IMG/VR virus record: IMGVR_UViG_3300047510_001118
Coordinates: 1-64,000 of that record
DNA length: 64,000 nt
Reading direction: 5' to 3' (one strand)
Shown here: positions 960 through 18,679 of the stretch, in pieces
Numbering within the stretch: the stretch's first letter is position 1
Layout: every line of letters starts with the position of its first letter
Notes under the pieces: model-generated
Told to the model about the DNA's origin: nothing
The model's database searches: none
The model's input: the letters and a program-made list of their open reading frames with translations, nothing else
Program-made: the position numbers and the translations under genes

Positions 960-1051
960 TGGTACCCCCGGCGGGAGTCGAACCCACATTGGCCAATTAT
1001 CTGTTGCTCACGGGATATAAATCCGCTGTTTTACCATTAAACTACAGGGGC
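960..1051 (-). tRNA. tRNA-Ile(TAT), with 22-nt variable region
   Basis: Cloverleaf, T-loop TTCGACT, encoded CCA, anticodon loop TTTATAT. Confidence 0.75.
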
Positions 1052-1062
1052 ATATAAAAGAA

Positions 1063-1172
1063 GCTCGGCTGGCGCTTGAATCCGCGGTAACCCTTCTCTT
1101 CCTGGCACCTCTCTACGTCGTCATGATATCTAGTAGAGTTCAGTGTTGTTCCAGTGTAGTTACTGACCGAGC
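1063..1172 (-). ncRNA. ~110-nt structured RNA between tRNAs
   Basis: Nested stems GCTCGG/CCGAGC, GTAAC/GTTAC, CTGG/CCAG, CTCTAC/GTAGAG. Confidence 0.55.
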
Positions 1173-1177
1173 AAACT

Positions 1178-1251
1178 TGGAGCGGGATACGAGAATCGAA
1201 CTCGTAACTAGAGCTTGGAAGGCTTTCGTTTTACCATTAAACTAATCCCGC
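1178..1251 (-). tRNA. tRNA-Gly(TCC)
   Basis: Cloverleaf, CCA, anticodon TCC. Confidence 0.95.
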
Positions 1252-1256
1252 ATAAA

Positions 1257-1331
1257 TGGTACACCGTAGGAGAATCGAACTCCTCTTACCTGCGTGAAAG
1301 GCGGGTGTCCTAACCGATAGACGAACGGTGC
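1257..1331 (-). tRNA. tRNA-Glu(TTC)
   Basis: Cloverleaf, CCA, anticodon TTC. Confidence 0.95.
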
Positions 1332-1335
1332 TTTG

Positions 1336-2121
1336 TTAAAGATATTTCTGTATTCTTTCTGCTATATTAGCCTGTAATTCTAATTTCATAGTGCCGTTTT
1401 CAGCACCATTGGAATGATATTGTTTAAAAAAATCTATACAATCAATACCACGTCCCATGATACGATCAAAAACTTCGATGTTTTCTTTTTCGTCGTCTCC
1501 GAATCGAACCACAGTCCATTTCAATTTATAATGATTTAATACTTTTACTAACTGTGTATAACTTTTAGAATGTTTTCTAATATACCATTCTCTTGTCTGC
1601 GACAATTGAAAAGCCATACGTTTTACTAATTCTTTGTGTACTTCTATAGGATAATCGTCTGGATTATATTCTACATCGCCATAATTGGGACTTTTTTCAA
1701 ACACATATCTTTTCCCATTATGTTTAAATGAACTTACAATATGCGGAAATGTAAAGTCTGTTACTAGCACATGATCTGGCTGTCCGTGCTTTTCTAAATA
1801 TTGTAAAAGTCTTTTATGGTAACCAACAAAATGGGCACCATTCAAACTACGATTAACTACTGTTCCGGGCAACAAGTTTGGCCAACTAGAATTAAGTTCT
1901 TGTTGTCTTAGATATGCCCAAACAGCAGATTCTATATTTTTTGTCGGCATTGGCTCTTCAACTTTATTTTCAATCTTATGTTTTAGATACCATTTGAACG
2001 CCTGAGGAAAATTTTTATGAAACCGAAGACTCCAAGTTCTAGGAGCAGTTTCATCTAAAATTTGATCTGCTAAACAGTTGTTTCCGTTACTTTGACAATC
2101 GCCTAATACTAATATTTTCAT
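1336..2121 (-). CDS. hypothetical protein, SGNH/GDSL-like N-terminus
   Basis: 261 aa, 'KILVLGDCQS' resembles the GDS block; AT-rich insertion in the tRNA array. Confidence 0.6.
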   Translation of the reverse strand: MKILVLGDCQSNGNNCLADQILDETAPRTWSLRFHKNFPQAFKWYLKHKIENKVEEPMPTKNIESAVWAYLRQQELNSSWPNLLPGTVVNRSLNGAHFVGYHKRLLQYLEKHGQPDHVLVTDFTFPHIVSSFKHNGKRYVFEKSPNYGDVEYNPDDYPIEVHKELVKRMAFQLSQTREWYIRKHSKSYTQLVKVLNHYKLKWTVVRFGDDEKENIEVFDRIMGRGIDCIDFFKQYHSNGAENGTMKLELQANIAERIQKYL

Positions 2122-2129
2122 AATTTATA

Positions 2130-2204
2130 TGGTGGAGGATGGGAGGATCGAACTCCCAACTCATGCTTGCAAAGCACATGTGTTCCCATTAGCACCAATC
2201 CCCC
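2130..2204 (-). tRNA. tRNA-Ala(TGC)
   Basis: G3:U70 pair, anticodon TGC, CCA. Confidence 0.95.
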
Positions 2205-2206
2205 AT

Positions 2207-2392
2207 TTAATCTTTATCAGGACAATCTGGATCTATATCCTGATCGTAATACTCGTTCTTCATTATTGCTTCATCAAACTGTTCGTTATCTGACTTTTTC
2301 TTTTTACTAAAGATAGTATCCCAGTTGTTGTCAAAGGTTTTTTGATCAACACTAAATGGTCTTGGTTTACTACCCTTTCCACCGTCTGACAT
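2207..2392 (-). CDS. small conserved phage protein (MSDGGKGSKPRP...)
   Basis: Strong AAGGAG SD; fills the gap between tRNAs. Confidence 0.75.
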   Translation of the reverse strand: MSDGGKGSKPRPFSVDQKTFDNNWDTIFSKKKKSDNEQFDEAIMKNEYYDQDIDPDCPDKD

Positions 2393-2408
2393 AACATCTC
2401 CTTAAAAT

Positions 2409-2485
2409 TGGCTGGCCTACCTGGGCTCGAACCAGGGACCCTTTGATTAACAGTCAAATGCTACTACCAACTGAGCTATAGGCCA
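2409..2485 (-). tRNA. tRNA-Asn(GTT)
   Basis: Cloverleaf, anticodon GTT. Confidence 0.95.
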
Positions 2486-2493
2486 ATAAAACT

Positions 2494-2568
2494 TGGTACC
2501 TGGTGACAGTTTCGAACTGCCGACCCTCTCGGTGTAAACGAGACGCTCTACCCCTGAGCTAACCAGGC
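2494..2568 (-). tRNA. tRNA-Val(TAC)
   Basis: Cloverleaf, anticodon TAC. Confidence 0.95.
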
Positions 2569-2578
2569 AAACTAACAT

Positions 2579-2656
2579 TGGTCGGAGTACAAGGATTCGA
2601 ACCTTGGACCCCCTGGTCCCAAACCAGGTGCGCTAGCCAGACTGCGCCACACTCCG
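2579..2656 (-). tRNA. tRNA-Pro(TGG)
   Basis: Cloverleaf, anticodon TGG. Confidence 0.95.
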
Positions 2657-2657
2657 A

Positions 2658-2810
2658 TTAACTTGGTATTACATGCGGTATATACGGAACTGCTCTTGGA
2701 CCACCATAGAGTTGTTCAAAAAGTTTTTTAGCCTCTTGCGGTGTCGCCGCATAGATTCTTTTCTTTTCTTCACCACTTGGTGTTCTTACAGTTGTTTCAT
2801 ACATTGGCAT
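2658..2810 (-). CDS. small hypothetical protein (MPMYETTVRTP..., 50 aa)
   Basis: AGGAG SD just after the tRNA-Gly CCA; start corrected from the ORF track. Confidence 0.7.
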   Translation of the reverse strand: MPMYETTVRTPSGEEKKRIYAATPQEAKKLFEQLYGGPRAVPYIPHVIPS

Positions 2811-2822
2811 ATAATAACTCCT

Positions 2823-2898
2823 TGGAGCGGGATAAGAGGCTCGAACTCTCGACCTATACCTTGGCAAGGTATCGCTCTACCAACTGAGCTAATCCCGC
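2823..2898 (-). tRNA. tRNA-Gly(GCC)
   Basis: Cloverleaf, anticodon GCC. Confidence 0.95.
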
Positions 2899-2906
2899 AT
2901 AAATTT

Positions 2907-2941
2907 TGGTGCCCCAAGAGAGACTCGAACTCTCACAGAGC
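2907..2941 (-). pseudogene. isolated 3' half of a tRNA (T-arm, acceptor 3' strand, CCA)
   Basis: GAGAG-TTCGAGT-CTCTC-TTGGGGC-ACCA with no upstream arms. Confidence 0.8.
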
Positions 2942-2945
2942 AAAT

Positions 2946-3022
2946 TGGTGCCTCAGGAGGGACTCGAACCCTCAAAATTTGGCTTCTAAGACCAACACGT
3001 ATACCAATTCCGTCACCGAGGC
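2946..3022 (-). tRNA. tRNA-Leu(TAG), short variable loop
   Basis: Leu-type D-loop GGAATTGGTATAC, anticodon TAG, A73. Confidence 0.9.
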
Positions 3023-3456
3023 GTCTTTCTTTCTTCCCACTTGGCTTTGATTGCTTCTGCTATCTTTGCTTTGTGTTCCGGAGACTTAGTTTTACCTAAG
3101 TTTCCTTTTCCTGCCTTACTTGCTGTTTTACGAGCTTGTAACGCACGAGCTTTTTCTAAACCGTGTTTTTCAACAGTTCTTTCCCAAATAGTTTTGCCAC
3201 TGTTTTCAACTTGATCTTGCCTATTCTCTTGTGCCGTCCCCCAATACAGATGATTAGGATTACCGCACTTAGCATTATGACAAGCATGACATAAATGAAC
3301 TTTATGTCCTGTTGGAACAGTTGTATCTAATAAATGTGCTAACAGTCCTTTGAAATAGTAACTGCCAGCACCTCGTTCAACACAGGCTTCATCTAACTTG
3401 AGATGGTTCTGTCTTTCTGCCTTAGGTAGTAAAATGTATTCTTCTATTAGTTTCAT
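3013..3456 (-). CDS. HNH homing endonuclease with NUMOD3-like C-terminus
   Basis: HLCHACHNAKCGNPNHLYWGTAQEN motif; GKTKSPEHKAKIAEA; start taken at MKLIEEY. Confidence 0.8.
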   Translation of the reverse strand: MKLIEEYILLPKAERQNHLKLDEACVERGAGSYYFKGLLAHLLDTTVPTGHKVHLCHACHNAKCGNPNHLYWGTAQENRQDQVENSGKTIWERTVEKHGLEKARALQARKTASKAGKGNLGKTKSPEHKAKIAEAIKAKWEERKTPR

Positions 3457-3484
3457 ACATTTATTTATGCTAAACACGACAAAA

Positions 3485-3511
3485 GCGTGTCTACCATTCC
3501 ACCACCAGGGC
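3485..3511 (-). pseudogene. isolated 5' half of a tRNA-Leu-like gene
   Basis: GCCCTGG-TGGTGGAATGGTAGACACGC, then abrupt loss of tRNA similarity. Confidence 0.75.
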
Positions 3512-3518
3512 AAAAAAT

Positions 3519-3593
3519 TGGTGCCGGATGTCGGGATCGAACTGACGACCTACCGCTTACAAGGCGGTTGCTCTACCACTGAGCTAATCCGGC
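3519..3593 (-). tRNA. tRNA-Thr(TGT)
   Basis: Cloverleaf, anticodon TGT. Confidence 0.95.
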
Positions 3594-3617
3594 GTGATTC
3601 TATTTATGAAAACTATT

Positions 3618-3692
3618 TGGCGGTCTCAACGAGAATCGAACTCGTCCCTACGGCGTGACAGGCCATTATACTAACCGATATACTATGAGACC
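3618..3692 (-). tRNA. tRNA-Asp(GTC)
   Basis: Cloverleaf, anticodon GTC. Confidence 0.95.
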
Positions 3693-3768
3693 ATATAGAA
3701 GCACACAGACTAACTACCAGAAACACTTATAGTGTCATTACTCGGTTCGAGCCAATGTGCTTTTATAT
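3693..3768 (-). ncRNA. inter-tRNA structured RNA A (shared closing stem)
   Basis: ATATAAAAGCACA...TGTGCTTCTATAT terminal stem. Confidence 0.5.
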
Positions 3769-3857
3769 GGTGGAGCCTGAAGGAATTGAACCTAACTGCC
3801 AGCCACCCAACAATATTATGGCAACGGATTTACAGTCCGCCGTTGGGAACAGGCTCC
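3768..3857 (-). tRNA. atypical tRNA-Tyr(GTA)
   Basis: Anticodon arm GCGGA-CTGTAAA-TCCGT, 8-bp acceptor, no D-stem, long V-arm. Confidence 0.7.
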
Positions 3858-3872
3858 AAACTTACGCGAAAT

Positions 3873-3884
3873 TTTTAAAGAACA
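3873..3884 (-). promoter_or_regulatory. boxA-like antitermination element TGTTCTTTAAAA
   Basis: Matches rrn boxA consensus TGCTCTTTAACA; lies downstream of the internal promoter. Confidence 0.6.
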
Positions 3885-3890
3885 AACAGT

Positions 3891-3983
3891 TGGTGGAAGG
3901 TGTGGGATTCGAACCCACGCACCGCATTTTGTACGGTGGACGGTTTAGCAAACCGCTGCCTTCGGCCACTCAGCCAACCTTCC
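3891..3983 (-). tRNA. tRNA-Ser(GCT)
   Basis: Long V-arm, anticodon GCT. Confidence 0.95.
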
Positions 3984-3995
3984 TAACTTGTGTCT

Positions 3996-4024
3996 ATTAT
4001 ACGACAAGTTTTTTAACTTGTCAA
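3996..4024 (-). promoter_or_regulatory. internal sigma70 promoter TTGACA-17-TATAAT with palindromic spacer
   Basis: TTGACAAGTTAAAAAACTTGTCGTATAAT. Confidence 0.85.
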
Positions 4025-4032
4025 CTACTTTA

Positions 4033-4122
4033 TGGCGGAAGCGGTGAGATTCGAACTCACGGACCATTTCTGATCGTCTGTTTTCAAGACAGGTGCAATA
4101 AACCGGACTCTGCCACACTTCC
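4033..4122 (-). tRNA. tRNA-Ser(TGA)
   Basis: Long V-arm, anticodon TGA, G73. Confidence 0.95.
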
Positions 4123-4130
4123 ATAAATTT

Positions 4131-4211
4131 TGGTGCCCCTAATCGGATTCGAACCGATAGTTATGACACTCCTTTTGAGAGAGCCGCCTTTACCAATTTG
4201 GCCATAGGGGC
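4131..4211 (-). tRNA. tRNA-Leu(CAA)
   Basis: Anticodon loop CTCAAAA; reduced V-arm. Confidence 0.9.
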
Positions 4212-4216
4212 AATAC

Positions 4217-4288
4217 TGGCGCCTCTGGAGAGATTCGAACTCCCATAACCTGGTTTAGAAGACCTGGCACTGCTCCATCAGCAGAGGC
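4217..4288 (-). tRNA. tRNA-Arg(TCT), compact D-arm
   Basis: Anticodon loop CTTCTAA; 72 nt. Confidence 0.8.
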
Positions 4289-4291
4289 TAC

Positions 4292-4375
4292 TGGTGCGAG
4301 AGACGGGACTCGAACCCGTATGCCTTTCGACGGCAGATTTTAAGTCTGCTGCGTATACCATTCCGCCACTCTCGC
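4292..4375 (-). tRNA. tRNA-Leu(TAA)
   Basis: Cloverleaf, anticodon TAA. Confidence 0.95.
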
Positions 4376-4379
4376 ATAC

Positions 4380-4455
4380 TGGTGCCGCTCCTTGGGATCG
4401 AACCAAGTTCCTCGGTGCTTCAAACCGGTGCAATGACCACATTTGCTAAAGCGGC
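4380..4455 (-). tRNA. tRNA-Phe(GAA)
   Basis: Anticodon loop TTGAAGC. Confidence 0.9.
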
Positions 4456-4504
4456 AAAAGAAAAACTCTACACACTAACTATGTTAACCGAGTAGAGCCA
4501 TAAT

Positions 4505-4579
4505 TGGGGTGAAGCCGGGAATCGAACCCTGCCTTACTGTTTCACAGACAGCCGTGCGTACCACTACACTAGCAACACC
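4505..4579 (-). tRNA. tRNA-His(GTG)
   Basis: G-1:C73, anticodon GTG. Confidence 0.92.
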
Positions 4580-4585
4580 ATTGTT

Positions 4586-4659
4586 TGGTATCGCGTACGG
4601 GGATCGAACCCGCCTGACTAGGTTGAAAGCCTAGTGACCTCCCAGAAGTCCAACGCGAT
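4586..4659 (-). tRNA. tRNA-Glu(TTC), second copy, divergent
   Basis: Anticodon loop CTTTCAA. Confidence 0.88.
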
Positions 4660-4665
4660 GTTGTT

Positions 4666-4743
4666 TGGCACCCCTGGAAGGACTTGAACCTTCGACTCCT
4701 ACCTTCGCAAGGTAGTACTCTGATTCCGCTGAGTTACAGGGGT
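4666..4743 (-). tRNA. tRNA-Arg(GCG)
   Basis: CTACC-TTGCGAA-GGTAG anticodon arm. Confidence 0.85.
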
Positions 4744-4905
4744 ATTAATACGTTCTAAAGCATCACGTCGCATTTTAAACGGACGATGCTCATCGGGACG
4801 ATGTACAATCAAATATTCCACACCGTCAATGTTTTCGGTCACACGGGTATCGTCACAGACAAATCGCTCATTATTAAAACGATTTTTAAACATAGTTTGT
4901 TTCAT
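4699..4905 (-). CDS. small hypothetical protein; 3' end overlaps tRNA-Arg(GCG)
   Basis: AAGGAG SD; 68 aa. Confidence 0.65.
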   Translation of the reverse strand: MKQTMFKNRFNNERFVCDDTRVTENIDGVEYLIVHRPDEHRPFKMRRDALERINTPVTQRNQSTTLRR

Positions 4906-4927
4906 GACAATCTCCTTAAAGTTGTTT

Positions 4928-5002
4928 TGGCCGGCCTGGAGAGATTCGAACTCCCGACTGCTGGTTTCGAAGACCAGAACTCTTCCACTGAGCTACAGGC
5001 CG
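4928..5002 (-). tRNA. tRNA-Arg(TCG)
   Basis: Anticodon loop CTTCGAA. Confidence 0.92.
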
Positions 5003-5010
5003 ATAATGTT

Positions 5011-5084
5011 TGGCACGGGTGCTAGGGCTCGAACCTAGAATAACAGAGTCAAAGTCTGTGGTGTTACCATTACACTACACCCGA
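5011..5084 (-). tRNA. tRNA-Gln(TTG)
   Basis: Anticodon TTG, G73. Confidence 0.93.
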
Positions 5085-5091
5085 TCAGAAC

Positions 5092-5166
5092 TGGTGGTAA
5101 TGGAAAGAGTCGAACTTTCACAGCGCACCGTATGAAGGTGTTGCACTACCATTATGCTACATTACC
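5092..5166 (-). tRNA. tRNA-CAT (elongator Met or Ile2)
   Basis: Anticodon CAT; lacks initiator C1:A72 mismatch and 3 G-C pairs. Confidence 0.85.
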
Positions 5167-5319
5167 ATATAGAAACATACTAATGAACCAGCCTGACGCA
5201 GCCGTACGCTTGGCAGATCGTTTCCAATCTGTTTCTCGCTTTTCTCGGTACTCTGTATGTTCAGGATTCCGCAGTCCTCAATACAATCGCTTGTAAGGGC
5301 AACTAATATGTTTTTATAT
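5167..5319 (-). ncRNA. inter-tRNA structured RNA B (shared closing stem)
   Basis: ATATAAAAACATA...TATGTTTCTATAT terminal stem, internal hairpins. Confidence 0.55.
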
Positions 5320-5392
5320 GGTAGGGGCACAGAGAATCGAACTCTGATTAATAGGTTAAAAGCCTACTACTTTGCCGTTAAGTTATACCCCC
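5319..5392 (-). tRNA. tRNA-Lys(TTT)
   Basis: Anticodon TTT. Confidence 0.93.
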
Positions 5393-5518
5393 ACGATCTT
5401 ACCACTCTTGTCACTTTCCATAACAGGATCTCCTATTTTAAATTTTTGTCGATAAAATATATCAATACTACAAGCATGAGTAAAACGGCCACCGCCCCAT
5501 TTTAGTTCCCCTTATAGT

Positions 5519-5593
5519 TGGTGCCTAATCTTGGGAACGATCCAAGGACCTATGCGTTATCAACACATTGCTCTACCACTGAGCTAATTAGGC
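5519..5593 (-). tRNA. tRNA-Ile(GAT)
   Basis: Anticodon GAT; variant T-loop ATCGTTC. Confidence 0.9.
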
Positions 5594-5799
5594 AAAATGA
5601 ATTTGTAAGTAGTTGCCCCATCGTTATAGCAACCATTCACCCGTGTAATTAAGCCGGCCGGGACTCGGTACGTCACTTGGAATACTTAACCAACGTGTCT
5701 ATTTTTTGCTAGGGTTTTGCGCCCCCCGTTGCCTTACTATAGTCAGCTCTTCGAAGAAGCCTGCTATAGTGTCTTTCTCTTGCTGACACTTACAAAACT

Positions 5800-5877
5800 T
5801 GGAGTGAGGAGTCGGATTTGAACCGACGGCTTTACAGTTTTGCAGACTGTTGCATTGGGCCTCTCTGCCATCCTCAC
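5800..5877 (-). tRNA. tRNA-Cys(GCA)
   Basis: Anticodon GCA, U73. Confidence 0.93.
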
Positions 5878-5883
5878 ATTACT

Positions 5884-5960
5884 TGGCGACCCGGGAAGGA
5901 TTTGAACCTCCGACATTTGGTTTTGGAGACCAACGTTCTGCCAGACTGAACTACCGAGCC
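5884..5960 (-). tRNA. tRNA-Trp(CCA)
   Basis: Anticodon CCA, G73. Confidence 0.93.
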
Positions 5961-15532: not shown

Positions 15533-15951
15533 TGTGTGTCTCCTTTTGTATTTTTTGCTATTGATTTATAACCATTATAGGTTGGGTGTACGCCATCGGA
15601 ACTTAGAGAATGCTGTCTAGCATCAATGATAAAGTCATTGTATTTTTTAGCAACATTTTGAACTGCGATTCTTTTAGAATCTTTTATTGCCGGTACTATC
15701 CAATAGACTCTATCTGCTTTTACTAAATTTCTCAACGTGTCTAATTCTTCAAACGTATTAACGTTTTTTAGATCGTTTGATCCTAGACTTATAATGATAG
15801 TCTTGGCAGTGTTATTTCCTTTAGTGTGTAATACATGACGATTTACATAGTCATAACTGTTAATACCGCTTTTGGCATAGGTTACACATTCTTTACGAAT
15901 CTGTCCTACACCAACAGCAAGACTATCGCCTAGAATTAAACATTCTAGCAT
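15529..15951 (-). CDS. SGNH hydrolase
   Basis: GDSL, GSND, DGVHP blocks. Confidence 0.85.
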   Translation of the reverse strand: MLECLILGDSLAVGVGQIRKECVTYAKSGINSYDYVNRHVLHTKGNNTAKTIIISLGSNDLKNVNTFEELDTLRNLVKADRVYWIVPAIKDSKRIAVQNVAKKYNDFIIDARQHSLSSDGVHPTYNGYKSIAKNTKGDTQ

Positions 15952-16484
15952 TAGAGAGTCTCCCCTCCGATAGTACGATTACAAGCGCACTTCTCACCAG
16001 TTTGAAGTGCGTCTAGGATACGAAGTGTTTCGTCACTGCTACGACCAACGTTCAAGTTGTTGACAGTAACGTGTTGGATAACGTTGTCTGGATCAACGAT
16101 GAATGTGGCGCGAAGTGCGGCACCTGCTGGAGCATAGAAAACTCCTAATTGATCGATAAGACTTAACTCACCACGCTGTGTGTCAGCGAACTGAATATGT
16201 TTGATCTTCTTGAGATCTTCGTGTGAAGCCTGCCATGCTAGTTTACAGAACTCGTTGTCTGTAGATCCTGTGAGCAATACAGCATCACGATCAGCAAAGT
16301 CTTGAAATAGTTTATCGTAAGCAACGATTTCAGTTGGACATACAAATGTAAAGTCCTTTGGGTAGTAAGCAATTACTTTCCATTTACCCGCAAATGATTC
16401 TTCTGTGATTGTAAAGAAATCATCTTTACCTGGGTTGACGCCTGTGACGGCAAATTTTTCTAACTTATTACCTACTGTTTTCAT
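15951..16484 (-). CDS. ahpC: 2-Cys peroxiredoxin AhpC
   Basis: YPKDFTFVCPTE motif. Confidence 0.95.
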   Translation of the reverse strand: MKTVGNKLEKFAVTGVNPGKDDFFTITEESFAGKWKVIAYYPKDFTFVCPTEIVAYDKLFQDFADRDAVLLTGSTDNEFCKLAWQASHEDLKKIKHIQFADTQRGELSLIDQLGVFYAPAGAALRATFIVDPDNVIQHVTVNNLNVGRSSDETLRILDALQTGEKCACNRTIGGETL

Positions 16485-16621: not shown

Positions 16622-17269
16622 TTAAAAAGTAGTTCCAACATTGAAAGTAGTTATGTTGTCATCTATAGGATCTTTAGTATAGAGATTGGCTACTCCTAAC
16701 ATTATGCCTTCATCGAGTTGATAGTTTAGTTCTGTACGATTACGAACATATTGTTGATCTGCCCAATCGATTAAAAATCTATTCACAAAAGTTACTCGCT
16801 TATCAATTTTATACGAAACCCATAGGGAATTAGTAATAACATCACTCCAACCCAAATTATGACTCATCTGTCCTACAGAAAATTCATTAGAGATTTTTGT
16901 TCGATCTGTTTTTAATAATTTGTATCCGTATCCAATGTTGACTGAAGTTCTATTTGAATCATTGCGTAATTCGTCGTAGTCATAACGCAACCAACCTATA
17001 GCATAACTTCTTTCATCTAAAGCATAATTTTCCTTGAATGAAAAATATCCTTCGTTACGTGCTCGTGTGTTATTTTTTTCGTTATACAGATAGATATAAT
17101 TGGCTTCTAGTACATGTTGCCATGACCCATATTCCTTTGAATGTTCAACAACCGTTGTAACTCCTATATTGGTATCTTTAACCATCTGTCCGCCAACTGT
17201 TACTTTGCCGGCGGCAAATACGGTAGGCAACAGAACAAATAACATTGTTCCTAGAATTACTTTTTTCAT
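16622..17269 (-). CDS. outer-membrane beta-barrel (DUF481/YdiY-like)
   Basis: Signal peptide, GYGYK, C-terminal Phe. Confidence 0.7.
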   Translation of the reverse strand: MKKVILGTMLFVLLPTVFAAGKVTVGGQMVKDTNIGVTTVVEHSKEYGSWQHVLEANYIYLYNEKNNTRARNEGYFSFKENYALDERSYAIGWLRYDYDELRNDSNRTSVNIGYGYKLLKTDRTKISNEFSVGQMSHNLGWSDVITNSLWVSYKIDKRVTFVNRFLIDWADQQYVRNRTELNYQLDEGIMLGVANLYTKDPIDDNITTFNVGTTF

Positions 17270-17371
17270 AAAAGTTCCTAAAATAAAAAGGGCTGTATTT
17301 CTTCAGCCCTAACTATGCATATTAACGCATTAGTAAACAAAACGTAAGTCTTTTTGGTGAAACTGATAAAA

Positions 17372-17395
17372 GAAAAGGCTCCGAAGAGCCTTTTC
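17372..17395 (-). terminator. terminator after tmRNA
   Basis: gaaaaggctc-cgaa-gagccttttc. Confidence 0.8.
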
Positions 17396-17752
17396 ACTAT
17401 TTTGGGTTACAAGGTATAGTTACCCCGGAGCTGCAGTTTCTTAGGCTGCTAGTTCAAAACGCTTGCCTGTTACAGCGAAGTCAGTTTTGAAATACTCAAA
17501 TGTAGATGCGTTTGCATTTACTAGTTTTGCTTGATTAACGGTCATCGCCTACCGTGTTGCCTCTTTCGCTATCTCGCCATGTCGAAACCGGTCGGGCCCA
17601 TCATAAAAGGACTAGAGCAAATACTACGAGTACAACTACTACACCTATTCCTAGATGAGTTAGATCATCGTTCATACTAATCTCCTTATGGTGGACCCGG
17701 GGGGAATCGAACCCCCGTCCACAACGCCTTCACTACGAAGGAATTACAACAA
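17396..17752 (-). ncRNA. ssrA: two-piece (circularly permuted) tmRNA
   Basis: Acceptor piece ends GGTTCGATTCCCCCCGGGTCCACCA (17689). Coding piece starts GGGCCCGACCGGTTTCGAC (17599). G3:U70. Tag ANASTFEYFKTDFAVTGKRFELAA* at 17441-17515. Confidence 0.9.
17601..17675 (-). CDS. 24-aa hydrophobic peptide inside the tmRNA intervening segment
   Basis: AAGGAG SD + MNDDLTHLGIGVVVVLVVFALVLL*. Confidence 0.5.
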   Translation of the reverse strand: MNDDLTHLGIGVVVVLVVFALVLL

Positions 17753-17756
17753 TACC

Positions 17757-17960
17757 TTAGGCTGGCTGAATATTGCTAGCCTGTTGACCTTTCATGCCCA
17801 TAGTTACTTCAAACCTTACACTCTGTCCTTCTTGTAGGCTTTTGAAGCCACTTGACTGAATCTGTGAAAAGTGAGCAAATAAGTCTGCGCCACCATCGTC
17901 CGGTGTAATGAACCCAAAACCTTTGGCGTCGTTAAACCATTTTACTTTTCCTGTTACCAT
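17757..17960 (-). CDS. cspA: cold-shock protein
   Basis: [20 protein letters not shown] motifs. Confidence 0.95.
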
Positions 17961-18005: not shown

Positions 18006-18584
18006 TTAAACACCCGCCTTGACTAACTGTGATATAACCCAAGTTTTTGGGTCTAAATCAATTTTCCAAGAAGTTGGCTTGTTTCTCATATCTTGTTTGT
18101 AAACAATATTTATTTGGTCATGTGTTAGATTAACTTTGAATCCATCTGTTAGTTGTTCTAGATTTGCTTTGACAGTAGCATAATCTACAAATGCCACAGC
18201 AAAAGTACCTTTAACTTGTATAATCATCAAATGATCAAAGTCTTTATCTAAAGTAGTTCTTTGATTGCGGCTTTCGTAAACATTTTTTAATTTAATACTA
18301 ATGCTTTTACATGGCTTACCAGTTATTTTTGTAAACATAGGGTAATTGCCTGTTTTTACTTCTACTTCGCCGTTTGCCCAATCATTAAACTTTACATCGT
18401 AATCTCTCTCATCTGTCCAATCTATATTTTTGGCTGTGTTAGATAATTGCATAGCCGCAATGATAAATTTTTCTTTCATCATACGGTTAGTGGATTCGTC
18501 TAAAACTGTTTGATGAGATATATTATGACATGCTTCTGAAAACTTAGTTATGTCGACCCATTTAAGAAAATCTTTATAATCCAT
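18006..18584 (-). CDS. hypothetical protein, possible PD-(D/E)xK nuclease
   Basis: YD...EVEVK motif. Confidence 0.5.
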   Translation of the reverse strand: MDYKDFLKWVDITKFSEACHNISHQTVLDESTNRMMKEKFIIAAMQLSNTAKNIDWTDERDYDVKFNDWANGEVEVKTGNYPMFTKITGKPCKSISIKLKNVYESRNQRTTLDKDFDHLMIIQVKGTFAVAFVDYATVKANLEQLTDGFKVNLTHDQINIVYKQDMRNKPTSWKIDLDPKTWVISQLVKAGV

Positions 18585-18679
18585 TATTCGCCGTCCGGAA
18601 ATTTATCGTGCCAGTCTATTATCCACCATATAGCGAATCCTACAACTACAGCGATAACAATCCAAAACATCCAATTCAT
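18584..18679 (-). CDS. 31-aa membrane peptide
   Basis: MNWMFWIVIAVVVGFAIWWIIDW...; start and stop overlap neighbouring genes. Confidence 0.6.
   Translation of the reverse strand: MNWMFWIVIAVVVGFAIWWIIDWHDKFPDGE

What the first reader, a model, noticed from the sequence alone, without database searches (positions are those of the whole stretch)
17601..17688. Membrane micropeptide encoded in the intervening segment of a two-piece tmRNA
The normally discarded segment between the acceptor CCA and the coding piece consists almost entirely of an AAGGAG SD plus a 24-codon ORF, MNDDLTHLGIGVVVVLVVFALVLL*, a single TM helix resembling type I toxin-like peptides. The SD can pair with the ORF's 3' end (ATAAGGAG/CCTTTTAT), so translation could depend on processing state.
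Basis: seen in the sequence. Interest (0 to 1): 0.7.

Follow-up and report, generated by a model that had tools for sequence, protein, structure and literature searches.

The report
Micropeptide gene inside phage tmRNA spacer
The stretch of a jumbo phage's two-piece tmRNA gene that is normally cut out and thrown away carries a real, conserved 24-residue membrane-peptide gene. In related freshwater phages the same spot holds many different small protein genes, a use of a stable-RNA gene not described in the papers I could search.

Summary
On the minus strand a two-piece (permuted) tmRNA gene (ARAGORN; Rfam RF04321, 132 bits) has an 89-nt intervening segment (17688-17600). That segment is an AAGGAG Shine-Dalgarno, a 6-nt spacer, a 24-codon ORF, TGA and one more base before G1 of the coding piece.

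Taken alone the ORF is barely beyond chance: 5.5% of shuffles give one. Comparison decides it. 128 related phage loci gave 88 distinct segments.
- Every distinct segment of 83-92 nt checked has an intact ATG..TGA frame. All but the two 91-nt ones encode this peptide family.
- Length changes are in whole codons.
- Variable columns fall 11/3/20 on codon positions 1/2/3.
- pN/pS is about 0.2 at pS about 0.6.

Other segments carry unrelated ORFs of 10-105 codons, including a thioredoxin, behind the same SD position. Cellular two-piece tmRNAs of similar segment length have none.

The SD is buried in a conserved, covarying stem with the last four codons, and this stem extends the acceptor helix. The "type I toxin" reading has no support: no family match and no antisense evidence. 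Translation and membrane insertion are inferred, not shown. No description of this was found in the searchable literature.

The parts
17689..17751 (-). Acceptor piece of the two-piece tmRNA (3' half of the tRNA-like domain). T-arm 17716-17700, acceptor 3' strand CGGGTCC 17699-17693, discriminator A plus CCA 17692-17689.
   Evidence: Rfam RF04321 match starts at 17751; ARAGORN; sequence read. G3:U70-type G-U pair when paired with GGGCCCG.
17600..17688 (-). Intervening segment (IV), 89 nt, lying between the encoded CCA and G1 of the coding piece. In known two-piece tmRNAs this part is absent from the mature RNA.
   Evidence: Definition of the IVS from PMC11915505.
17682..17687 (-). Shine-Dalgarno AAGGAG, 6 nt upstream of the ATG.
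   Evidence: Among 81 distinct phage IVs an SD-like motif goes with a spanning ORF (52/4/8/17, Fisher p=3e-8).
17601..17675 (-). 24-codon ORF plus TGA: MNDDLTHLGIGVVVVLVVFALVLL. Acidic N-terminus followed by a 17-residue hydrophobic stretch.
   Evidence: Family conservation, codon-position bias 11/3/20 and pN/pS about 0.2. All 28 distinct 83-92-nt IVs counted are intact (two of them, 91 nt, carry an unrelated peptide); five more were seen intact separately.
17677..17688 (-). 5' strand of the IV-closing stem (UAAGGAGAUUAG). It contains the SD.
   Evidence: RNAfold. Register iv[i]:iv[len-5-i] is paired in 81-100% of 79 IVs at i=0-10, with several pair types at i=5-11.
17604..17615 (-). 3' strand of the IV-closing stem (CUAGUCCUUUUA), which is codons 21-24 (L-V-L-L).
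   Evidence: This explains why unrelated IV ORFs end in ..VSL..VFL or ..VLL.
17600..17603 (-). UGAU spacer opposite ACCA. It supplies the stop codon and U(-1) before the presumed RNase P site.
   Evidence: Conserved as TGAT or TAAT in most phage IVs. Most of the cellular two-piece tmRNAs recovered also end in TGAT and none has an ORF, so the spacer is ancestral and has been co-opted.
17371..17599 (-). Coding piece of the tmRNA. 5' acceptor strand GGGCCCG 17599-17593; tag reading frame 17515-17441 (ANASTFEYFKTDFAVTGKRFELAA*); intrinsic terminator 17395-17372.
17757..17960 (-). Cold-shock protein gene directly upstream. Its stop codon lies 5 nt from the tmRNA 5' end, so co-transcription is possible.
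   Evidence: ORF; PHROG 729, 1.5e-22. No sigma-70-like promoter was found on the minus strand between them.

Best explanation
The intervening segment of this jumbo phage's permuted tmRNA gene is a genuine small protein-coding gene. Its product is a 24-residue peptide with an acidic N-terminus and one hydrophobic, membrane-spanning-length helix.

It is one allele of a hypervariable coding slot found in a large clade of freshwater phage two-piece tmRNA genes. The ancestral hairpin that closes the segment and extends the acceptor helix has had ORFs placed in its loop. Its purine-rich 5' strand has become an SD. The ancestral UGAU spacer opposite ACCA supplies the stop codon, one base before the presumed RNase P site.

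Inferred mechanism:
1. The tmRNA promoter drives one precursor.
2. Ribosomes load on the SD mainly while the 3' strand of the stem is not yet transcribed. Less efficiently, they load after tRNA-type processing has removed the stacked acceptor helix.
3. They translate to the UGA and unzip the stem.
4. The peptide inserts into the host inner membrane and acts there as an accessory, moron-like factor rather than as part of trans-translation.

Shown here: the anatomy, purifying selection on the peptide, the conserved covarying stem, the SD-ORF association, the cassette-like diversity of the slot, and the absence of coding segments in cellular homologues. Inferred: translation, its timing relative to processing, membrane insertion, and biological role.
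For: - Anatomy.
- 128 related phage loci gave 88 distinct IVs.
- The family has 21 distinct IVs in viral contigs, 9 further new ones from the metagenome scan, and L173 and the MAG contig L149. All have an intact ATG..TGA ending 1 nt before G1. Lengths are 83, 86, 87, 88, 89 and 92 nt, so they differ by whole codons apart from a 1-nt SD variant that lies outside the ORF.
- Variable columns by codon position are 11/3/20 (chi-square p=0.0017). pN/pS is 0.18-0.20 at pS 0.54-0.60. There are 82 synonymous against 37 non-synonymous codon differences from consensus.
- The family sits behind five different acceptor-stem variants. It occurs only inside tmRNA IVs in the fetched loci plus the 278-kb genome.
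- SD presence tracks ORF presence, Fisher p=3e-8.
- Other IVs encode recognised protein domains: Thioredoxin PF00085 at 4e-21 and PGDYG PF14083 at 3e-6. Those loci are still scored as permuted tmRNA by Rfam, and most of them also by ARAGORN.
- Near-identical tmRNA flanks carry unrelated IVs.
- Cellular two-piece tmRNAs with IVs of 62-90 nt (Microvirga, Advenella, Novimethylophilus and others) have the stem and usually TGAT, but no SD-led ORF.
- The stem covaries. The cost of opening the SD is 8.1, 4.4 and 2.6 kcal/mol in precursor, excised IV and nascent RNA.
- A metatranscriptome contig of a relative spans T-arm, CCA, the whole IV and the start of the coding piece.
Against: - There is no direct evidence of translation. 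No Ribo-seq or proteomics was available. The one RNA-library contig could be DNA carry-over.
- The window's ORF alone arises in 5.5% of shuffles.
- The last four codons are constrained by the RNA stem, so part of the C-terminal conservation is not protein-level.
- The sequences are phylogenetically related, so the Fisher and chi-square values overstate independence.
- Some close tmRNA relatives have only a stem and no ORF (L017, L068, L046 and others). The peptide is therefore dispensable.
- The SD is almost fully paired in the modelled precursor.
- The peptide has no basic residue, so its membrane topology is not predictable.
Confidence: 0.7

Rival explanations
1. The ORF is a cis-acting leader. 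What matters is the act of translating across the segment: the ribosome unzips the roughly 21-bp helix and ends 1 nt from the RNase P site, thereby timing or permitting pre-tmRNA folding and processing. On this view the peptide itself is incidental.
For: - ORFs of quite unrelated sequence all start 8-14 nt after CCA. They end at the UGA 1 nt before G1, or just before the 3' strand of the stem.
- The stop codon pairs with the CA of CCA in the modelled precursor.
- Some ORFs even run through G1 (L039, L056, L020, L025).
Against: - pN/pS of about 0.2 and a conserved hydrophobic core show that selection acts on the amino-acid sequence.
- tmRNA genes with 96-100% identical flanks manage with ORF-less 61-nt segments, so translation is not needed for maturation.
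- Cargo such as thioredoxin is clearly selected as a protein.
Confidence: 0.12
2. It is a type I toxin-like module. A toxic membrane peptide is held silent by fold-back pairing of its SD with the 3' end (as in hok mRNA) and is released on RNA processing, for host killing, lysis timing or addiction.
For: - The peptide is small and very hydrophobic.
- The SD is sequestered by 5'-3' pairing within the same RNA.
- Resemblance to hok fold-back inhibition rests on my own knowledge.
Against: - No hit to any Pfam or NCBIfam toxin family.
- Promoter-like sites across the scanned region, both strands, are not above shuffle expectation (3 found against 4.4 expected), and no antitoxin RNA is evident.
- The closing stem is ancestral in cellular tmRNAs that have no ORF, so it did not evolve as a toxin control element.
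- The slot carries non-toxic cargo.
Confidence: 0.12
3. The ORF is not a gene. The open frame and hydrophobicity are by-products of a U/G-rich structured spacer.
For: - 5.5% of shuffles of the window's segment give a comparable ORF.
- The pyrimidine-rich 3' strand of the stem forces Leu, Phe and Val codons.
Against: - All 28 distinct 83-92-nt segments counted are intact, as are five more seen separately. Length changes are in whole codons.
- There is a strong third-position bias, and synonymous differences outnumber non-synonymous ones 82 to 37.
- SD and ORF presence are associated.
- Cellular segments of equal length have no such ORF.
Confidence: 0.04

Closest known systems
Circularly permuted (two-piece) tmRNA genes of Alpha-/Betaproteobacteria and Cyanobacteria (Rfam RF01849-51, RF04321; described in PMC11915505)
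   Same: - Gene order: acceptor piece, encoded CCA, intervening segment, then coding piece.
- G-U pair at the third position of the acceptor stem, and a tag frame ending in LAA.
- A closing stem that extends the acceptor helix, and a TGAT spacer before G1 in most.
   Different: Cellular intervening segments recovered here (62-90 nt) are non-coding. The Rfam beta-type consensus is only about 30 nt. In the phage clade the segment carries an SD and an ORF of 10-105 codons.
Intron-form tmRNA genes with homing-endonuclease ORFs in a T-loop group I intron (PMC11915505)
   Same: A protein-coding ORF sits inside sequence that is removed from the mature tmRNA.
   Different: Here there is no intron. The segment lies between CCA and G1 and would be removed by tRNA-type end processing. 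The cargo is small accessory proteins, not a selfish endonuclease.
Dual-function RNAs and sRNA-encoded small proteins (SgrS/SgrT, RNAIII/delta-haemolysin, SR1/SR1P) - from my own knowledge
   Same: One transcript yields both a functional RNA and a small, often membrane-active, peptide.
   Different: Here the peptide is encoded in the part of the precursor that is discarded from the RNA product. The RNA is a tmRNA rather than a base-pairing regulator.
hok-type type I toxin mRNAs with fold-back inhibition - from my own knowledge
   Same: A small hydrophobic peptide whose SD is occluded by pairing between the 5' and 3' ends of its own RNA.
   Different: No sequence family match. No antisense RNA is evident. 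The stem is inherited from tmRNA processing structure.
mRNAs co-transcribed with tRNAs and released by RNase P/E (E. coli tufB operon, T4 tRNA region) - from my own knowledge
   Same: Protein-coding RNA is liberated by tRNA-processing cuts.
   Different: Here the mRNA is nested inside one split RNA gene, whose two halves must pair across it.

Membership tests
Two-piece (permuted) tmRNA | Covariance-model match above the curated threshold | tested here: met
   RF04321 scores 132.1 bits (cut-off 47). RF01850 scores 126.3 bits (cut-off 84).
Two-piece (permuted) tmRNA | T-arm, 7-bp acceptor stem with a G-U pair at the third position, and an encoded CCA upstream of the coding piece | tested here: met
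   CGGGTCC-ACCA pairs with GGGCCCG. ARAGORN calls a permuted tmRNA.
Two-piece (permuted) tmRNA | Tag reading frame with an Ala resume codon and a hydrophobic ..LAA end | tested here: met
   ANASTFEYFKTDFAVTGKRFELAA* at 17515-17441.
Two-piece (permuted) tmRNA | Precursor is cleaved into two pieces and the intervening segment is removed | not testable with these tools
   Only one RNA-library contig of a relative spans the unprocessed junctions. No read ends were available.
Type I toxin-antitoxin | Small hydrophobic membrane peptide | tested here: met
   24 aa; Kyte-Doolittle maximum over 15 residues is 3.55.
Type I toxin-antitoxin | Membership of a known toxin family (Hok, Ldr, Ibs, TisB, Fst and others) | tested here: not met
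   No Pfam or NCBIfam family even at E<=10, apart from noise.
Type I toxin-antitoxin | Antisense or overlapping RNA antitoxin | tested here: inconclusive
   The consensus promoter scan found nothing above shuffle expectation across the region on both strands. No strand-specific RNA data were available.
Type I toxin-antitoxin | Toxicity on expression | not testable with these tools
   Requires an experiment.
Protein-coding gene under purifying selection | Frame kept, whole-codon length changes, excess third-position variation, pN/pS below 1 | tested here: met
   28 of 28 counted segments are intact and five more were seen intact separately. Codon-position variation is 11/3/20 (12/3/21 in the larger set). 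pN/pS is 0.18-0.20.
Protein-coding gene under purifying selection | Ribosome-binding site at functional spacing | tested here: met
   AAGGAG lies 6 nt before the ATG. SD and ORF presence are associated across 81 IVs.
Group I intron-borne ORF in tmRNA | Intron inserted in the T-loop with group I structure | tested here: not met
   The T-loop is uninterrupted (TTCGATT). The segment lies after CCA. No intron family was hit in the Rfam scan.

The most novel reading that the evidence does not exclude
Phage two-piece tmRNA genes act as a general expression platform. The spacer that tRNA-processing enzymes cut out is a swappable cassette slot for small proteins.

Because the stop codon sits one base from the RNase P cut (and in some alleles lies beyond it), the excised mini-mRNA ends at or before its stop. 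The peptide's fate, release or tmRNA tagging and degradation, would then be coupled to the trans-translation capacity that the same gene provides.
Probability: 0.2. Interest if true: 0.9.

Novelty: new variant of a known kind. Interest (0 to 1): 0.8.

Why it matters
tmRNA intervening segments are treated as discarded spacer, and gene callers do not report ORFs this short. This result shows that a stable-RNA gene can host a family of translated cassettes in a widespread clade of uncultured freshwater jumbo phages.

It adds a new hiding place for micropeptide genes. It also shows how an RNA-processing helix and its spacer can be co-opted as ribosome-binding site and stop codon. Finally, it raises a testable link between stable-RNA maturation, translation initiation and possibly ribosome rescue.

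Practically, annotators of phage and metagenomic tmRNAs should inspect the segment between CCA and G1 for ORFs.

Tried and rejected
- **Cultured relatives.** blastn of three tmRNA regions against 50,697 phage records found only T-arm fragments or nothing. No isolate is available as an experimental system.
- **RNA evidence.** Two run searches and two read-laying runs were made. Only run X15 (a wetland metatranscriptome) gave a 201-nt contig of a relative spanning the unprocessed segment. X16 and X20 covered only conserved tmRNA parts, and X18 laid nothing. X21-24 are of unknown kind and look like DNA. No read-end information on processing sites was obtained.
- **Family searches of the peptide and six other segment-encoded peptides** in Pfam and NCBIfam gave only noise.
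- **SmpB** (PF01668) is absent from the 278-kb record, which is about 75% complete.
- **Promoter scan.** No minus-strand sigma-70-like promoter lies upstream of the tmRNA, and nothing was found above shuffle expectation.
- **Copies elsewhere.** tblastn for further copies of the peptide gave only weak hydrophobic noise (E>0.01) outside tmRNA segments.
- **Primary papers.** The papers on two-piece tmRNA (Keiler 2000; Sharkady and Williams 2004) are not held. Statements on processing rest on PMC11915505 and on my own knowledge.
- **Not attempted.** The peptide is below the 30-aa limit for structure prediction. I did not send a complex-prediction job, because I make no specific binding claim.
- **Rejected idea.** TATGAT before G1 is not a -10 box for the coding piece, because the spacing would place the transcription start inside the acceptor strand.

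Full report
**What is there.** The window is the first 64 kb of a 278-kb IMG/VR virus record. It has phage hallmarks: ribonucleotide reductase, tail proteins and an endolysin. It also has a block of 27 tRNA genes.

On the minus strand ARAGORN calls a permuted tmRNA at 17350-17781, with tag ANASTFEYFKTDFAVTGKRFELAA. Rfam scores tmRNA_permuted at 132 bits and beta_tmRNA at 126 bits.

Reading the sequence gives this layout:
- The acceptor piece ends CGGGTCC-ACCA at 17689.
- The coding piece begins GGGCCCG at 17599.
- The 89 nt between them are U-AAGGAG-AUUAGU-AUG, 23 further codons, UGA and U.

An intrinsic terminator follows the gene at 17395-17372. A cold-shock protein gene ends 5 nt upstream.

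**Is it more than chance?** On this sequence alone, hardly. With the SD and the 3' stem strand held fixed, 5.5% of interior shuffles give an ATG or GTG at working distance and a frame open to the stem. I therefore collected relatives.

**Relatives.** Three pattern scans of viral contigs were keyed on the T-arm/CCA region or on the 5' end of the coding piece, not on any ORF. They gave 128 loci with a two-piece tmRNA and 88 distinct intervening segments. One metagenome scan added 17 loci. Loci that I spot-checked are called permuted tmRNA by Rfam, and most of them also by ARAGORN. These include loci with long segments.

**The peptide family.**
- 21 distinct segments of 83-89 nt encode relatives of the window peptide, with consensus M-[ND]-D-[DN]-L-x-x-L-[AG]-I-G-V-V-V-V-L-V-V-F-A-L-V-L-L.
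- The metagenome scan added nine new distinct sequences. One of them, L179, encodes the identical peptide from different DNA behind a different acceptor stem. L173 and the MAG contig L149 are further members.
- All 28 distinct segments of 83-92 nt counted have an intact ATG..TGA frame ending one base before G1. Two of these (the 91-nt L062 and L129) encode an unrelated peptide. The four 87-nt members and L173 fell outside that count but were seen intact.
- Family lengths of 83, 86, 89 and 92 nt differ by whole codons. The 87-nt form has an extra A in the SD, outside the ORF.
- In ten ungapped 89-nt members the variable columns fall 11/3/20 on codon positions 1/2/3 (chi-square p=0.0017). Nei-Gojobori pN/pS is 0.18-0.20 with pS 0.54-0.60.
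- In 14 members there are 82 synonymous against 37 non-synonymous codon differences from consensus.
- The family occurs behind five different acceptor-stem variants. In the fetched loci plus the whole 278-kb genome it occurs only inside tmRNA segments.

This is the signature of a translated gene under purifying selection.

**A general coding slot.** Among 81 distinct segments that begin TAA, 60 have an ORF that starts 8-14 nt after CCA and spans the segment. An SD-like motif in the first 10 nt goes with such an ORF: 52 have both, 4 the SD only, 8 the ORF only and 17 neither (Fisher p=3e-8; the sequences are not phylogenetically independent).

- ORFs run from 10 to 105 codons and belong to many unrelated families.
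- Several further hydrophobic micropeptide families occur, for example MTHKEEKRQLILFCVPAVAIILALVFL and MIEAIGFFITLMALMWIAIILGEMFL.
- One cargo is a thioredoxin (PF00085, 4e-21) and one is a PGDYG protein (PF14083).
- Most ORFs use the TGA of the conserved ..TTATGAT|GGG as their stop. Others stop 9-13 nt earlier, just before the 3' strand of the stem.
- tmRNA flanks that are 96-100% identical carry unrelated segments, including ORF-less 61-nt ones. The slot therefore behaves like an exchangeable cassette, and the ORF is not needed for tmRNA maturation.

**Cellular comparison.** A scan of 185,579 species genomes for two-piece tmRNAs with segments of 60-90 nt gave only 26 hits.
- The true cellular cases (Microvirga, Advenella, Novimethylophilus, and Robbsia, Janthinobacterium and Spiribacter MAGs) have a closing stem, for example CAAGCACA.../...TGTGTTTG. 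Most end in TGAT before G1. None has an SD or an SD-led ORF.
- The remaining hits were chance juxtapositions.
- The one exception is L149, a 7.6-kb contig in a MAG labelled Bifidobacterium. It looks like a mis-binned phage and carries the window family.
- The Rfam beta-type consensus segment is about 30 nt and begins cAAGgg.

So the stem, the purine-rich start and the UGAU spacer are ancestral processing structure. The full SD and the ORF are phage additions that re-use them.

**RNA structure.** RNAfold places the acceptor stem, then CA of CCA against UG of the stop codon, then UAAGG/UUUUA, then GAUUAG/CUAGUC. Together these form one helix of about 21 bp with one bulge and one mismatch.

Across 79 segments, position i pairs with position len-5-i for i=0-10 in 81-100% of cases, with several pair types at i=5-11. 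Swapping partners between segments costs about 4 kcal/mol. This stem also explains why unrelated ORFs end in ..VSL..VFL or ..VLL.

The modelled cost of opening SD through AUG is:

| RNA species | Cost (kcal/mol) |
|---|---|
| Precursor | 8.1 |
| Excised segment | 4.4 |
| Nascent transcript lacking the 3' strand | 2.6 |

Because both strands of the stem lie within the segment, cuts at CCA and at G1 do not by themselves free the SD. The likeliest window for initiation is co-transcriptional, with partial relief after processing. This is inference.

**Expression.** One wetland metatranscriptome (X15) holds a 201-nt contig of a relative covering 17526-17720. That span is the T-arm, CCA, the whole segment and the start of the coding piece. 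Seven of its 11 differences within the ORF fall at third codon positions. This is compatible with an unprocessed precursor RNA, but DNA carry-over cannot be excluded. Other runs were uninformative.

**What the peptide does.** Unknown. It has two Asp residues near the N-terminus, no basic residue, and 17 consecutive apolar residues. No Pfam or NCBIfam family matches. Nothing supports an antisense antitoxin.

Three things shape my reading. The slot holds varied cargo. ORF-less alleles exist. Hydrophobic micropeptides are the commonest cargo. I therefore favour an accessory, moron-like membrane peptide expressed from the tmRNA promoter. I rank a type I toxin or a purely cis-acting leader lower, and both remain open.

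The phage record has no SmpB, so its tmRNA presumably uses the host's.

**Literature.** Full-text searches and reading of three papers found no mention of protein-coding intervening segments:
- The 2025 tmRNA database paper notes a tRNA-Ala and a repeat element in intervening sequences, and endonuclease genes in the intron form.
- "Ends of the line for tmRNA-SmpB".
- The Melnitz phage paper describes a two-piece phage tmRNA with a glutamine riboswitch.

The library lacks most subscription journals, so prior description cannot be excluded.

**Verdict.** The coding interpretation is strongly supported by comparative evidence. The toxin analogy is unsupported. The processing-dependence idea is plausible only in a modified form. 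I rate this a new variant of known kinds (dual-function RNA genes, and ORFs within tmRNA intervening sequence) and of high interest.

Noticed in passing
L002, L003, L005/L006, L008-L010, L012, L014 (marine-type loci); e.g. L005:6455-6754: In a second tmRNA lineage (acceptor CACCTCC) the intervening segment lies in a frame that is open from a stop 73 nt before the CCA end. The frame runs through the T-arm, CCA and the segment into the coding piece. A conserved GTG sits at about -66.

Segment lengths of 101, 140 and 170 nt are all 2 mod 3. The encoded core (DWYYTENEW.RLG..GPLPPERN) is conserved, with Arg AGA/CGT and Leu CTG/TTA swaps.

Gene callers have predicted this ORF of about 86 aa as 'hypothetical protein' in 86 clusters, mostly ENA with some Tara and JGI records. 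The start codon and whether it is translated are unresolved.
   Followed up: partly
L039/L082/L092, L056, L020, L025 (intervening segments): Some SD-led ORFs are out of frame with the TGA of the TGAT spacer. They read through G1 into the tmRNA coding piece. After a cut at G1 they would be non-stop messages.

The L039 peptide (MPVDMYYYTESEWNRLGCGPLPPERN...) is homologous to the marine-lineage frame above.
   Followed up: partly
L054/L108 and L033 (intervening segments of 268 and 248 nt): The tmRNA intervening segment encodes an 84-aa thioredoxin (PF00085, 4e-21) in L054/L108, and a 73-aa PGDYG-family protein in L033.
   Followed up: yes
L096 (intervening segment of 273 nt): Two consecutive ORFs, each with its own AGGAAG-type SD, lie inside one intervening segment. 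The cassette appears to be bicistronic.
   Followed up: no
L049/L133 (intervening segment of 91 nt): This ORF-less segment contains a T-arm-like hairpin (GTGGTTCGATTCCAC). It may be a remnant of a tRNA-like element inside the segment.
   Followed up: no
L127:11252-11328 and L149:2944-3018: tRNA genes with a CUA anticodon (amber-suppressor type; ARAGORN labels them Pyl) lie near the tmRNA in two related contigs. This hints at TAG recoding in some of these phages. None is present among the window's 27 tRNAs.
   Followed up: no
window 960-5960 (-): A dense block of 27 tRNA genes covers most amino acids, about 11 kb from the tmRNA.
   Followed up: no
window 18584-18679 (-): Another small hydrophobic ORF (31 aa, MNWMFWIVIAVVVGFAIWWIIDWHDKFPDGE) has its stop overlapping the start of the next gene (18006-18584). 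It is probably a further membrane micropeptide gene.
   Followed up: no
window 15951-16484 (-) and 16622-17269 (-): Downstream of the tmRNA lie a peroxiredoxin-like gene (its sequence carries the VCP motif) and a 215-aa protein with an N-terminal signal-like sequence and no PHROG match.
   Followed up: no
L002:5575-5791 and L005:8005-8217: manA RNA motifs (RF01745) lie 1.5-2 kb downstream of the tmRNA in the marine-type loci.
   Followed up: no
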